Source: Euprymna scolopes (taxonomy: Eukaryota). From it: a stretch of DNA of 64,000 bases. Shown piece after piece: positions 1-63,090 of this stretch. The position numbers were made by a program, and so were the translations under genes. The stretch lies in the NCBI GenBank assembly GCA_053919585.1, contig CM132821.1; one strand, 5' to 3'. Numbering within the stretch: position 1 is the stretch's first letter; each line of letters starts with the position of its first letter. The notes beneath the pieces are model-generated. The model was not told the origin of the DNA. It saw only the letters and a program-made list of their open reading frames with translations, and ran no database searches.

Positions 1-389
1 ACAGCGTGCAAATGTGTCTTTCCTCAGTGAAATCTCACCAGCTAAGAGGATAAAAGGTCTCAATGGCAATCATGTGACTCCTCTCTTCAGCCAAAGGTGA
101 CTTTTGACCTTTAAGACTCTTTCATTGAAAACATAGCTCCTAACAGATATTGCTGTTGGAATGAAACTAAAATGCTATGATCTGTTAGAAATGTGGGTTC
201 AAATCACAGAGAACTCTGTTTCTCTCGACTAAAAACAAAACTTGTTTTCAGATTGTACAGTTTCAGGATTTTAATGTGTTAGTGTATGGATCGATCAATT
301 TGACTTCACAGGGAAAGGGGAGCTCATATTAAACCTTGCAAGGATGATTGAGATTGTCGGACTGACTTCCTCATCTTGGTTGTTATAGT

Positions 390-431
390 CACAACGTTTC
401 GGCCGTTTTGCCCTCCGGCCTTCATCAGGTG
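390..431 (-). ncRNA. minimal type I hammerhead ribozyme, intact core
   Basis: Minus strand reads CAC CUGAUGA A GGCCG-GAGGGCAAAA-CGGCC GAAAC GUU^GUG: stem I CAC/GUG, perfect 5-bp stem II, palindromic ACGU stem III. Confidence 0.85.
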
Positions 432-670
432 TTTTGTATCAAACTGGGGAACCGTTTGTTAGGAGTCTCGAACCCAACCCTTTATTATTATTATGGGGGT
501 ACCGTGTTAGGACTCCAGCTAGGCTCTGGGACATAGTTGCTGATTCTCTGTTTTGAATGTTGCTTTTCACTGCCTTCGTTCAGGATTGAACTCAGCACCT
601 TTGGGTAACTGTAAACTTTGATACAACGTCTAGGACCACTTGGCCATCGGTTCCCCAGTTCGATACAAAA

Positions 671-712
671 CACCTGATGAAGGCCGGAGGGCAAAACGGC
701 CTAAACGTTGTG
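671..712 (+). ncRNA. hammerhead ribozyme copy with G12>U core mutation (probably inactive)
   Basis: CAC CTGATGA AGGCCG...CGGCC TAAAC GTT GTG; T at 702 replaces the catalytic G. Confidence 0.7.
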
Positions 713-938
713 ACTATAACAACCAAGATGAGGAAGTCGGTCCGACAATCTCAATCAATGAAAACACCTCATCTCAAAAATACAGACAATTACTACCCTT
801 GCAAGGATGATCTGTAAGTGTGGAACTTTGACTAAAAAGCTATCCCTGATTGGAGAAATGTTTTAATGAGGTTATAGAAACATCCAGTGTTTGAAAGAAG
901 ATATTAAAACAAGACTGATTTTTTTTTTTTTTTAATAA

Positions 939-4420: not shown

Positions 4421-4945
4421 ATTTTTTTTTTTTTATTACATTTTTTTATTACATTTTCACCCCAAACAAGGCATATTGCCACTATGATGTAGGGGCTTAC
4501 TATCAGGGACATAAGCTACAGGGGTACCATACAGGGGGTTGGGCAGCAAGATGTTTGTTCGCATTACACTTGAACTTCTCCATGTCGGTACAGTTGGGGA
4601 AGAAGGGACTCTGAAGGGAGTCTAGCAGTTCTGGGGAAGAAACAACTGGAGTAGAAAGCTCTCTTACATCTAGGAATACTGTGTAGAGGTGGGATTTAGC
4701 TGCTTATCAGGTTTGTCGGAGGTATTTACGTCGAGGGGGGGTACAAGTGCTTGCAGTTCGTCAGAGCATTCACCATTAAAATACTTGAACAACAGAGGGA
4801 TGCAACATTTCATCGGTGACAGAGGCTGAAGTTTAGGTGACAGTTCAGGACCTATCGGGTTGGCAACTCTCTTTTGTATCCTGTCTGGTAGTGAGAGACT
4901 AGTAGCAAATGCACCAGCCCAAATGTGACAGCAATACTTCATACA
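4421..4945 (-). mobile_element. CR1/L2-group LINE 3' fragment
   Basis: MKYCCHIWAG...DRIQKR...KYFNGECSDEL RT C-terminus plus A-rich tail; homologous to 7172-7722. Confidence 0.8.
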
Positions 4946-19499: not shown

Positions 19500-19897
19500 A
19501 ATAGACCTATAATAAATTTTTGTTTTTGAATTTTTTATTAGTTGGATTATTTGAGATACTGTTCTTATTTTGAGTGTTATTTTCACAAGGTTTTGGTCAA
19601 TGTAATTTCTGACTTTCTTCAGGTGTATCTTGTCGAACTCGGTGAGTCTGCACAGACTCATGGCATAGTTGGTAAAATTCCGTTGTAAGTTACATGCTTC
19701 TGGAGGTTGAAGGTTCAATCTTTAGTTCAGATGACACTCAAAAATACAATTGTGAATTACTCTGGGCTTCTACCCTATTATGGCTGACAGAATCAGAGCA
19801 GGCTACTTCTGCGGATTAAATAAAGTGTTCCGTTGGAAATTCTGTACTGATTCCCGAGTTCGGCAACATGCATCTAAAGAAGGTCAGAGGCTACATT
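19500..19897 (+). mobile_element. Hammerhead/tRNA-head element, copy E (degenerate)
   Basis: Antisense arm 19550-19642, box A TGGCATAGTTGG 19661-19672, box B GGTTCAATCT 19712-19721, body ATGGCTGACAG...AAATAAAG, truncated sense arm 19853-19897. Confidence 0.7.
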
Positions 19898-24189: not shown

Positions 24190-24415
24190 ACTGTGTCATG
24201 GATGACAGAATAAGAACAATCTACCCCCATGAGAATTAAATAAAGGCTTGAGTTTGAAATTCAGTGTAGATTCCAAAGCTGGACATGAAAAGATTTTTGC
24301 GTTTTTGAAAAGATACACCTGAAGAAGGTTGGAGGTCACATTGGCCGAAATGAGAGAATAACAACCAAGATGAGAATAACGATCCAAATTAGCAATCATT
24401 ATCTCAAGAATTTTG
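24190..24415 (+). mobile_element. Hammerhead element, copy D (single arm, decayed ribozyme)
   Basis: GTCATGGATGACAG...AAATAAAGG...ACACCTGAAGAAGGTTGGAGGTCACATTGGCCGAAA; the cleavage triplet is lost. Confidence 0.7.
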
Positions 24416-27846: not shown

Positions 27847-28269
27847 ACGTTTCTGAATTTTTGAGATGAGGATTAGTTATATGTATTATTATTCATCGGA
27901 CTACTGTTCTCATCTTGAGTGTGATTTTCATAACGTTTCGATCAATATAACCTCCGACCTTCTTCAGGTGTACCGTGGCGCAGTGGTTAGAGTACTGGAA
28001 AAAATCAATTGTAAAAGTGATATTCTCCGAAATATACATTTGCGAATTATTTAGGACCTCTATCCAGTCATGGCTGACGGAACAAGAGCACGCTACCCTC
28101 GTGAAGTAAATAAAGGGTTCCGCTCAAAATTTCGTCCAAATTCCAGAGTTCGACAGAAACATTCCCGAGTTCGACAAGATACACCTGAAGAAGGTCGGAG
28201 GTTATATCGAGCGAAACGTTGTGAAAACACACTCAAGATGAGAACAGTAGTCCGATGAATAATAATACA
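27847..28269 (+). mobile_element. Hammerhead/tRNA-head element, copy B (inverted arms, 12-bp TSD)
   Basis: TSD TACAATATTGTT at 27835-27846 and 28270-28281; arms about 27880-27972 and 28180-28271; box A TGGCGCAGTGG at 27976-27986. Confidence 0.85.
28182..28223 (+). ncRNA. minimal type I hammerhead ribozyme, core intact
   Basis: CAC CUGAAGA A GGUCG-GAGGUUAUAU-CGAGC GAAAC GUU^GUG; one G.G mismatch in stem II. Confidence 0.75.
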
Positions 28270-28487
28270 TACAATATTGTTGTCTTCAAGTCCCAACGTA
28301 AACAAGTTCTTGATGAGCCATTCTACTTAAGTTAACAAATTTACCGAATTTCCATTACTAACAATTACTATATTGTCCAATTGACTACTGTACACTCTTA
28401 ACCCTTATCCTCAAGTGATTTCTGGGCCTTGATAAGTGGTTATGCCTATGTAAAAAAAAAAAAAAAAATTCCCTCGAATATCATGGT

Positions 28488-62820: not shown

Positions 62821-63090
62821 ATATATGTTACTTGTATTCATTGGACTATTGTTCTAATCTTGGATGTTATTTGTGCAACGTTTCAGTCGGTTTGGCCTTT
62901 GACCGTCTTCAGGCTTGTTGGTTGTTGGTTGGAAAAGAAAAGAGAAAAACAACAACCAACATGCCTGATGAAGGTCGAAGGCTAATCCGACCAAAACGTT
63001 GCACGAATAACACTCAAGATGAGAACGATAGTCCAATCAATGCAAGTAATATAAACAATCAGCCCTCATTTCGAAAACTCAAAACTTTAA
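62821..63090. mobile_element. Hammerhead element, copy C (inverted arms, no head; different subfamily)
   Basis: Arms about 62821-62925 and 62950-63056; hammerhead motifs at 62874-62915 (-) and 62962-63003 (+) with TGC/GCA stem I. Confidence 0.8.
62874..62915 (-). ncRNA. minimal hammerhead ribozyme, core intact but stems weakened
   Basis: AGC CUGAAGA C GGUC-AAAGGCCAAACC-GACU GAAAC GUU^GCA. Confidence 0.6.

What the first reader, a model, noticed from the sequence alone, without database searches (positions are those of the whole stretch)
334..811. Ribozyme-bearing SINE-like family: tRNA-like Pol III head driving into a minimal hammerhead, with hammerhead motifs on both strands (five copies)
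Seen in the sequence: copy A, read on the minus strand, has box A TGGCCAAGTGG and box B GAGTTCAATCC 42 nt apart, then a body with AATAAAGGGTT, then an intact hammerhead CAC-CUGAUGA-A-GGCCG(10)CGGCC-GAAAC-GUU^GUG. No T4 terminator lies in between. The ribozyme segment is repeated as a 110-bp inverted arm and the unit has a 15-bp TSD. Copies at 19.5-19.9 kb (boxes A and B) and 27.85-28.27 kb (box A) share this order; copies at 24.2-24.4 and 62.8-63.1 kb are partial. None has coding capacity. Established knowledge: minimal type I hammerheads with palindromic stem III, and inverted truncated pLTRs, are hallmarks of Penelope-like elements; schistosome Sm-alpha is a Pol III retroposon with a hammerhead. 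Inference: this is a non-autonomous, Pol III-driven SINE or retrozyme-like parasite of a Penelope-like RT/GIY-YIG element. Read-through transcripts would fold into rods with ribozyme motifs in both polarities. I do not know of this combination being described, but I cannot search.
Basis: partly seen in the sequence, partly recalled or inferred. Interest (0 to 1): 0.88.

Follow-up and report, generated by a model that had tools for sequence, protein, structure and literature searches.

The report
Truncated Penelope element end, not SINE
The unit is a cut-short copy of the last ~0.4 kb of a protein-coding Penelope-like retrotransposon of this mollusc, inserted in that element's usual mirror-image way; this tail carries a small hammerhead ribozyme motif and a tRNA-derived piece at which many short copies begin.

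Summary
The sequence features are real: tRNA-type boxes A and B, a minimal type I hammerhead (intact only on the minus strand), 110-nt inverted arms and a 15-nt direct repeat.

The unit is not a separate SINE family. Genome-wide, the same head-body-hammerhead-tail block lies 42 nt after the stop codon of a 732-aa RT/GIY-YIG ORF. It is therefore the 3' UTR/pLTR of an autonomous Penelope-like element, which I call PLE3.

The window copy is a 5'-truncated PLE3 insertion with the known Penelope hallmarks:
- an inverted truncated partner copy made anew at insertion;
- a ~38-nt tail extension at one end only;
- a variable target-site duplication.

One thing goes beyond the ordinary. The head is significantly like this genome's tRNA-Ser. 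In about 22-25% of head-bearing PLE3 copies, and about 43% in a diverged sister lineage with a different head, the copy starts 6-14 nt before box A. That spacing fits an internal Pol III-type start making SINE-like subgenomic retrocopies, but it is inferred, not shown.

Head-start copies do not form their own lineage. The scan had flagged this family several times elsewhere in this genome.

The parts
334..348 (.). Target-site duplication, first copy (CCTTGCAAGGATGAT). The last 4 nt may belong to the element instead.
   Evidence: TSDs of 10-15 nt flank about 20 of 30 other copies.
349..647 (-). Direct copy of the PLE3 3' UTR. It is 5'-truncated 11 nt inside the tRNA-like head and ends at the 'short' 3' end (...CAATCA).
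   Evidence: The same block lies 42 nt after the PLE3 stop codon in L073-L075.
573..647 (-). tRNA-derived module: box A at 646-636, box B at 593-583.
   Evidence: The family's consensus head, taken from 30 copies, scores 43 in local alignment to this genome's tRNA-Ser(UGA), against 17.1 +/- 3.3 for 1000 shuffles, none as high. Family consensus box A is TGGCCGAGTGG.
390..431 (-). Intact minimal type I hammerhead motif. Predicted cleavage is between 393 and 392 (GUU/GUG).
   Evidence: Features of PLE min-HHRs listed in PMC4209133. Helices I and II covary between lineages.
648..796 (+). Inverted, 5'-truncated partner copy of the element's 3' end. It holds a hammerhead with GAAAC changed to TAAAC at 671-712, the tail, and the ~38-nt terminal extension at 758-796.
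   Evidence: A one-sided extension and an inverted partner are described for PLEs in PMC8557442.
797..811 (.). Target-site duplication, second copy.
27877..28274 (+). Copy of a diverged sister lineage with the same layout: inverted arm 27877-27980, head with box A TGGCGCAGTGG from 27976, direct arm with hammerhead 28172-28274.
19599..19897 (+). Older, decayed copy of a related lineage. The head has boxes A and B; the hammerhead motifs are mutated or cut off.
24190..24405 (+). 5'-truncated solo copy (body, hammerhead, tail) of a related lineage, with no inverted arm.
62824..63053 (.). Two inverted tails (107 nt each, 84% complementary) only 16 nt apart: an extreme 5'-truncation.

Best explanation
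Window 334-811 holds one retrotransposition product of an autonomous, endonuclease-bearing Penelope-like element family, here called PLE3.

**Element layout.** A full PLE3 unit reads, in order:
- a short upstream pLTR piece (hammerhead, tail and extension, ~125 nt);
- a 5' region and a 732-aa RT/GIY-YIG ORF;
- the stop codon, then 42 nt;
- a tRNA-derived module, a body, a minimal hammerhead, a ~50-nt tail and a ~38-nt terminal extension.

**The window copy.** Only the last ~300 nt were copied in direct orientation (minus strand). A second, inverted copy of the last ~150 nt was joined to its 5' end, and the target was duplicated by 11-15 nt. This is the known Penelope insertion pattern.

**The hammerhead.** It is the element's own pLTR ribozyme motif. 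It is of the type thought to act as a dimer (stated in the literature, not tested here).

**Inferred extra.** The tRNA-derived module may act as an internal Pol III-type promoter, because many copies start just before its box A. If so, the element's 3' UTR would be transcribed on its own and retrotransposed as SINE-like short copies. I put this sub-claim at about 50-55%.
For: **Shown: the block belongs to an autonomous PLE.**
- About 70 of the first 100 of 2113 genomic matches to the head word are preceded by one conserved 45-nt sequence.
- In L073, L074 and L075 that sequence is the end of a PLE ORF. The ORF has RVT_1. It shares 27-37% aa identity with the genome's 806-aa PLE. Its C-terminus aligns to that element's GIY-YIG domain, E=2e-11.
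- The copies sit as inverted ORF pairs with a hammerhead/tail piece 5' of the ORF.

**Shown: 5'-truncation gradient.** Exact-word counts are 529 in RT, 1757 at -110, 4845 in the head and 9541 in the tail.

**Shown: Penelope insertion hallmarks in 30 short copies.**
- The inner junction of the inverted arm differs in nearly every copy.
- The extension sits at one end only: 24 upstream, 5 downstream, 1 both.
- TSDs are 10-15 nt.
- Both arms of a copy share subfamily variants.
- The genome's two other PLE families show the same motif build and the same short versus extended ends. These match PMC8557442 and PMC4209133.

**Shown: no separate lineage.** Head-start and ORF-linked copies are intermingled (variants).

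**For the Pol III sub-claim.**
- The head resembles tRNA-Ser.
- 5' ends pile up 11-14 nt before box A in about 22-25 of 100 copies, against about 5 in the 40 nt further upstream.
- Plain TSD-flanked copies start there, for example L079.
- A sister lineage with a different head sequence shows the same pile-up 6-12 nt before its box A in about 43 of 100 copies.
Against: - No RNA evidence. Poly(A)/oligo-dT libraries hold the family on both strands about equally, with no pile-up of ends at the head or at the cleavage site. Such libraries would miss Pol III RNAs.
- The lack of T4 runs on the sense strand is largely explained by its A-richness, so it is weak support.
- ARAGORN and Rfam do not call the head a tRNA.
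- Self-cleavage is untested. Rfam hammerhead models do not match.
- My classing of the 100 listed rows was done by eye.
Confidence: 0.85

Rival explanations
1. One reading: an independent, non-autonomous tRNA-headed SINE (or retrozyme-like) family that parasitises a Penelope element and merely shares its tail.
For: - The head is tRNA-like with A and B boxes.
- Hundreds to thousands of copies start at the head.
- Some are plain TSD-flanked units of ~390 nt.
Against: - About 70% of head-bearing copies continue upstream into the PLE3 ORF with a fixed junction.
- Head-start copies are scattered among ORF-linked copies in the tree: 10 label changes against 11.9 for shuffled labels. They share the same subfamily variants.
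- The copies seen are dispersed singles or inverted pairs, not tandem, and each RNA would hold one sense hammerhead only.
Confidence: 0.07
2. The 5'-end hotspot at the head is not a transcription start. It would instead be an RNA-processing site, such as an RNase P-like cut at a tRNA-like fold in the PLE 3' UTR. Alternatively it would be a preferred point of cDNA joining, helped by a 7-nt complementarity. That complementarity is between AATTGTC just 5' of the head and GACAATT at the element's 3' terminus.
For: - The AATTGTC / GACAATT complementarity is conserved in both lineages.
- Some copies begin with the inverted terminus fused at that point (L084).
- No RNA evidence for a Pol III transcript.
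Against: - The direct part ends at the same point whatever the inverted partner's length, and also in plain-flank copies without any partner.
- The hotspot keeps its distance to box A in two lineages whose sequences at the start differ.
- The starts lie 2-6 nt upstream of the tRNA-like +1 position, not at it. No cloverleaf is predicted.
Confidence: 0.3
3. A DNA transposon derivative (MITE) with ~150-bp terminal inverted repeats.
For: Inverted termini and flanking direct repeats.
Against: - The inner ends of the 'TIR' differ from copy to copy. One outer end is usually 38 nt shorter, yet it lies inside the TSD.
- TSD length varies from 10 to 15 nt.
- The block is contiguous with an RT/GIY-YIG ORF.
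Confidence: 0.01

Closest known systems
Canonical EN+ Penelope-like elements (Penelope/Poseidon, Neptune, Nematis) and their pLTR minimal hammerheads (Cervera & de la Pena 2014, PMC4209133; Craig et al. 2021, PMC8557442)
   Same: - RT plus C-terminal GIY-YIG ORF, strong 5'-truncation, pLTR and an inverted 5'-truncated partner.
- A 30-40-bp tail at one end.
- A minimal type I hammerhead with an extra nucleotide after A9, a G10.1-C11.1 pair, a long helix II and a palindromic ACGU in place of helix III.
- Pairs of motifs 100-700 bp apart on opposite strands were already reported in Schistosoma.
   Different: A tRNA-derived module with A and B boxes sits 42 nt after the stop codon, and many copies begin there. 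I found no mention of this in the papers read. The clade of PLE3 was not determined.
Schistosome SM-alpha / Sj-alpha SINE-like retroposons with a hammerhead (Ferbeyre et al. 1998, as cited in PMC8490949 and PMC4209133)
   Same: Short dispersed repeats described as SINE-like that carry a type I hammerhead. That they have Pol III boxes is my recollection, not read here.
   Different: SM-alpha carries a canonical hammerhead and is described as a family of its own. Here the short copies are the 3' end of the autonomous element itself and do not form a separate lineage.
Non-LTR retrozymes of animals (Cervera & de la Pena 2020, PMC7229834; Li et al. 2026 preprint, 10.64898/2026.07.22.740005)
   Same: Non-coding, hammerhead-bearing sequences related to PLE pLTRs.
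   Different: Retrozymes are tandem repeats that give circular RNAs after double cleavage. Copies here are dispersed singles or inverted pairs with one sense motif per RNA. No tRNA head is described for retrozymes.
LTR elements with small-RNA-gene promoters in their repeats (Cassandra 5S; Helenus/Ajax tRNA; Kojima 2024, PMC10886601)
   Same: A Pol III-type small-RNA-derived module embedded in the terminal repeat of a retroelement.
   Different: Those are non-autonomous LTR retrotransposons. Here the host is an autonomous PLE, and the module lies in its 3' UTR.
Ceph-SINEs of squids and cuttlefish (Akasaki et al. 2010; Kojima 2018, PMC5786205)
   Same: tRNA-headed short repeats. A cephalopod host is my guess from genome size and contig number. 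An earlier scan note says only 'mollusc'.
   Different: The two published Ceph-domain strings (CCTTGGGAAAG, CCTCCAGCTATGGGTTAAATAGT) are absent from this family and its relatives in the window.

Membership tests
EN+ Penelope-like element (insertion of its 3' end) | Full-length members encode RT with a GIY-YIG endonuclease | tested here: met
   - 732-aa ORF with RVT_1.
- 27-37% aa identity to the genome's 806-aa RVT_1+GIY-YIG PLE.
- The C-terminus aligns to that GIY-YIG domain, E=2e-11.
- The Pfam GIY-YIG model itself does not reach threshold.
EN+ Penelope-like element (insertion of its 3' end) | pLTR/partial tandem and an inverted 5'-truncated partner copy | tested here: met
   A hammerhead/tail piece lies 5' of the ORF and the ORFs sit as inverted pairs. 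The inverted arm has a copy-specific inner junction in 30 short copies.
EN+ Penelope-like element (insertion of its 3' end) | 30-40-bp tail extension at only one end of the insertion | tested here: met
   The ~38-nt extension is at one end in 29 of 30 copies. The two other PLE families of this genome show the same.
EN+ Penelope-like element (insertion of its 3' end) | Hammerhead motif within the pLTR | tested here: met
Minimal type I hammerhead of PLEs | Core CUGANGA...GAAA, an extra nucleotide between 9 and 10.1, G10.1-C11.1, a long helix II, palindromic 15.2-16.2 | tested here: met
   CUGAUGA-A-GGCCG..CGGCC-GAAA-CGU-U. Criteria are from PMC4209133.
Minimal type I hammerhead of PLEs | Helices kept by compensatory changes | tested here: met
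   Ten motifs from this genome were compared. Helix II pairs 2, 3 and 5 and helix I pairs 1 and 2 change on both sides. The sample is small and was aligned by hand.
Minimal type I hammerhead of PLEs | Self-cleavage (as a dimer) | not testable with these tools
   No pile-up of RNA ends at 393/392 in oligo-dT libraries, which is uninformative.
Rfam hammerhead families | Match to a curated covariance model | tested here: not met
   No hit at the gathering threshold or at E<=10. This is expected for motifs without helix III.
tRNA-derived SINE (SINE2) | tRNA-derived region with A and B boxes | tested here: met
tRNA-derived SINE (SINE2) | The tRNA-derived region is the 5' end of the repeat unit | tested here: not met
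   About 70 of 100 copies continue upstream into the PLE ORF. Only about 22-25% start at the head.
tRNA-derived SINE (SINE2) | A non-autonomous lineage of its own | tested here: not met
   Head-start and ORF-linked copies are intermingled.
tRNA-derived SINE (SINE2) | Transcription by RNA polymerase III | not testable with these tools
   The only indirect evidence is 5' ends 6-14 nt before box A in two lineages.
Non-LTR retrozyme | Tandem arrays with one hammerhead per monomer, giving circular RNA | tested here: not met
   Copies are dispersed or in inverted pairs. No circle-type joints appear in RNA contigs or reads.
Ceph-SINE superfamily | Ceph-domain in the body | tested here: inconclusive
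   Two published motif strings are absent.

The most novel reading that the evidence does not exclude
A clade of autonomous Penelope-like elements carries a tRNA-derived Pol III promoter in its 3' UTR. At least two diverged lineages with different tRNA-like heads are involved. The clade would thus make its own SINE-like subgenomic RNAs, which its RT/endonuclease inserts with the same mirror-image scars. That would be a 'built-in SINE', and a possible birthplace of the many unclassified SINEs of mollusc genomes.
Probability: 0.5. Interest if true: 0.65.

Novelty: new variant of a known kind. Interest (0 to 1): 0.45.

Why it matters
As it stands, the window feature is an ordinary truncated Penelope insertion. 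That corrects an attractive but wrong reading, the 'ribozyme SINE'.

At family level it shows that short, non-coding, tRNA-headed, hammerhead-tailed repeats of this genome can be the 3' ends of an autonomous PLE. Automatic pipelines would file such repeats as unclassified SINEs. This matters for repeat annotation of large mollusc genomes.

If the 5'-end hotspot is a Pol III start, this would be the first PLE known to me with an internal small-RNA-type promoter. It would also be a directly testable model of how a SINE is born from its autonomous partner.

Tried and rejected
- **Rfam and ARAGORN on the unit.** No hammerhead or tRNA call.
- **Partner search via GIY-YIG (PF01541).** It led first to an abundant young 806-aa PLE and an older relative. 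Their tails share only the build of the motif, with U in place of C3, and no sequence with this unit. Neither is the source element.
- **A lead from an earlier scan note (s1-263355, same contig).** It gave nothing usable.
- **L031, the best GIY-YIG hit.** It is bacterial uvrC on a small contig.
- **RNA reads.** The family is present on both strands. There are no preferred ends and no circle joints. Template-switch-oligo ends at 445 and 527 lie at G-runs and look like strand-invasion artefacts.
- **Thermodynamics of the isolated motif.** Not better than shuffles, z = -1.6.
- **Difference in core integrity between arms.** Direct arms 27 of 30 against inverted arms 20 of 30. This is too weak to interpret.
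- **Absence of T4 runs on the sense strand.** By my own rough estimate, about 0.45 runs would be expected from composition alone, so it is not evidence.
- **Literature string searches for the motif sequences.** Nothing relevant.
- **My first working model.** I read the unit as a PLE-mobilised SINE. It rested on a BLAST sample biased towards copies shaped like the query, and I abandoned it.
- **A second batch of 20 ORF-linked copies.** It could not be fetched.

Full report
**1. Observation**

- a 15-nt direct repeat at 334-348 and 797-811;
- 110-nt inverted arms at 345-454 and 648-757, 97% complementary;
- box A TGGCCAAGTGG and box B GAGTTCAATCC, 42 nt apart;
- AATAAAGGGTT;
- an intact CAC-CUGAUGA-A-GGCCG(10)CGGCC-GAAAC-GUU/GUG at 431-390.

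The arm copy on the plus strand (671-712) reads TAAAC instead of GAAAC, so only one strand has an intact core. Rfam gives no hammerhead or tRNA hit at gathering scores or at E<=10, and ARAGORN finds no tRNA here.

The four other 'copies' in the window are 72-78% alike and match mainly the arm. They belong to related, older lineages or are truncated pieces.

**2. A real, abundant repeat with Penelope-type insertion scars**

The window comes from a 5.9-Gb assembly. The unit has at least 2147 candidate matches, and the 40 that were scored are 89-97% identical. I analysed 30 fetched copies.

- The full arm is ~149 nt. A ~38-nt terminal extension is present at only one end: the upstream arm in 24 copies, the downstream arm in 5, both in 1.
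- TSDs of 10-15 nt enclose the shortened end.
- The inner junction between the inverted arm and the tRNA-like head differs in nearly every copy. The inverted arm is therefore made anew at each insertion and is not inherited.
- Both arms of a copy share subfamily variants, CUGACGA versus CUGAUGA.

These are the features Craig et al. 2021 describe for Penelope-like elements (PLEs). [quoted passage not shown]

The motif has the traits of PLE minimal hammerheads listed by Cervera and de la Pena 2014. These are an extra nucleotide after A9, a G10.1-C11.1 pair, a long helix II and palindromic 15.2-16.2 (PMC4209133). That paper also reports pairs of such motifs 100-700 bp apart on opposite strands.

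**3. The turn: the unit is the 3' end of an autonomous PLE**

My first model was a PLE-mobilised SINE. It rested on a BLAST sample biased towards copies shaped like the query.

An unbiased look came from searching the genome for the 22-nt head word together with its 45 upstream bases. This gave 2113 matches. In about 70 of the first 100, the upstream bases are one conserved sequence.

In loci L073-L075 that sequence is the end of an ORF of 732 aa (stop to stop). The evidence that this ORF is a PLE protein is:
- it has an RVT_1 domain;
- it shares 27-37% aa identity with the genome's abundant 806-aa RVT_1+GIY-YIG PLE;
- its C-terminus aligns to that element's GIY-YIG domain, E=2e-11.

The head starts 42 nt after the stop codon. 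The ORFs lie as inverted pairs. A ~125-nt piece (hammerhead, tail and extension) precedes the 5' region of the forward copy, which is a pLTR.

Exact-word counts fall from the tail towards the ORF, a 5'-truncation gradient:

| Position of the word | Exact matches |
|---|---|
| Tail | 9541 |
| Head | 4845 |
| 110 nt before the head | 1757 |
| RT region | 529 |

Copies that start at the head (20 fetched) and ORF-linked copies (8) are intermingled in a maximum-likelihood tree. The head-start label needs 10 changes against 11.9 for shuffled labels. The two groups also share the same subfamily variants.

So the window unit is a strongly 5'-truncated insertion of this element, which I call PLE3. Its direct part begins 11 nt inside the head.

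**4. Other PLEs in the genome**

The young 806-aa family and an older relative carry a motif of the same build 40-70 nt from their 3' ends: CUC-UUGAAGA-A-GCCCG..CGGGC-GAAAC-GUU/GAG. In it, U stands at position 3. Both families show short and extended ends.

Their tails are otherwise unlike PLE3's. Across ten motifs from this genome, helices I and II keep pairing through changes on both sides.

**5. What is not ordinary**

The family's consensus head is significantly similar to this genome's tRNA-Ser(UGA) gene. Its local alignment score is 43, against 17.1 +/- 3.3 for 1000 shuffles with none as high.

5' ends are not spread evenly. About 22-25 of 100 head-bearing copies have their junction 2-3 nt before CTAGTGACAT, which is 11-14 nt before box A. 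Only about 5 have it in the next 40 nt upstream. The junction stays there in three situations:
- whatever the length of the inverted partner;
- in head-to-head palindromes;
- in plain TSD-flanked copies without a partner.

The sister lineage seen at 27.9-28.3 kb behaves the same. About 53 of 100 copies continue into a homologous upstream stretch. About 43 start 6-12 nt before its box A, although the head sequence differs.

A start fixed by distance to box A in two lineages fits a type 2 Pol III promoter producing a ~390-nt subgenomic RNA. That RNA would carry the element's own 3' recognition end. This step is inferred. The rivals are:
- an RNA-processing site;
- a joining hotspot helped by the conserved 7-nt complementarity between AATTGTC before the head and GACAATT at the 3' terminus.

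**6. RNA data**

Public poly(A)/oligo-dT libraries contain the family on both strands about equally. They show no preferred ends at the head or at the predicted cleavage site, and no circle joints. This neither supports nor excludes Pol III transcripts or self-cleavage.

A transcript spanning the whole insertion would fold into a ~110-bp perfect hairpin (-248.9 kcal/mol, z = -22.9). That fold would bury both motifs. The idea of rods with ribozymes of both polarities is therefore not supported.

**7. Comparison with the literature and verdict**

None of the papers read mentions a tRNA-derived module in a PLE, or a PLE-borne Pol III start. They covered PLE hammerheads, PLE structure, animal retrozymes, cephalopod and mollusc repeats, and SINE origins. 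Repbase and Dfam could not be consulted.

The closest known things are:
- PLE pLTR hammerheads;
- the schistosome SM-alpha SINE-like hammerhead repeats;
- non-LTR retrozymes;
- LTR elements with small-RNA promoters in their repeats.

The feature in the window is an ordinary PLE insertion. The family is a new variant of a known kind, with one testable and moderately interesting twist.

The scan had already noted this family at several other places in this genome. One earlier follow-up read it as a SINE, which my data contradict. One first-reader note suggested a 'self-promoting pLTR', which my data partly support.

Noticed in passing
L043:4100-4160 (-), and L032-L045 generally: The genome's most abundant young PLE has an 806-aa ORF, copies ~99% alike, and more than 15,000 GIY-YIG candidates. 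It carries a hammerhead-like motif with U instead of C at core position 3 (UUGAAGA), paired with G8. Cervera and de la Pena describe a U3-A8 variant; this U3-G8 form may be weakly active or inactive.
   Followed up: partly
L044:2625-2965 (+): Two different minimal hammerhead motifs (CUGAUGA-GCUG..CAGC-GAAAC with palindromic AGUACU / AAUAUU) lie 289 nt apart in direct orientation next to a PLE copy. This may be a retrozyme-like tandem.
   Followed up: no
L031 (G000:C553:29970-33197): A small contig encodes bacterial-type UvrC (GIY-YIG, UVR and UvrC RNase H domains) and an Ldh_2 dehydrogenase. It is probably a bacterial contaminant or symbiont contig in the assembly.
   Followed up: partly
G000:C7:171.68-171.97 Mb and G000:C15:27.866-27.873 Mb: Large tandem arrays of tRNA-Ser genes. 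On C7 they are about 3.25 kb apart over ~300 kb. On C15 they are 152 or 304 bp apart. The search pattern had 829 matches in all.
   Followed up: no
window:58787-58858 (-): ARAGORN calls a tRNA-Cys with anticodon ACA, which is an unusual anticodon. It may be a pseudogene or a repeat-borne tRNA-like sequence.
   Followed up: no
window:1190-1250 and 905-945: Long A/T homopolymer runs (about 25 nt) flank the region. The surroundings are AT-rich (GC 29-38% across the window).
   Followed up: no
L043:4390-4440 and 4590-4630 (-): The 3' UTR of the 806-aa PLE contains two internal A-runs of 30-40 nt between the stop codon and the hammerhead-like motif.
   Followed up: no
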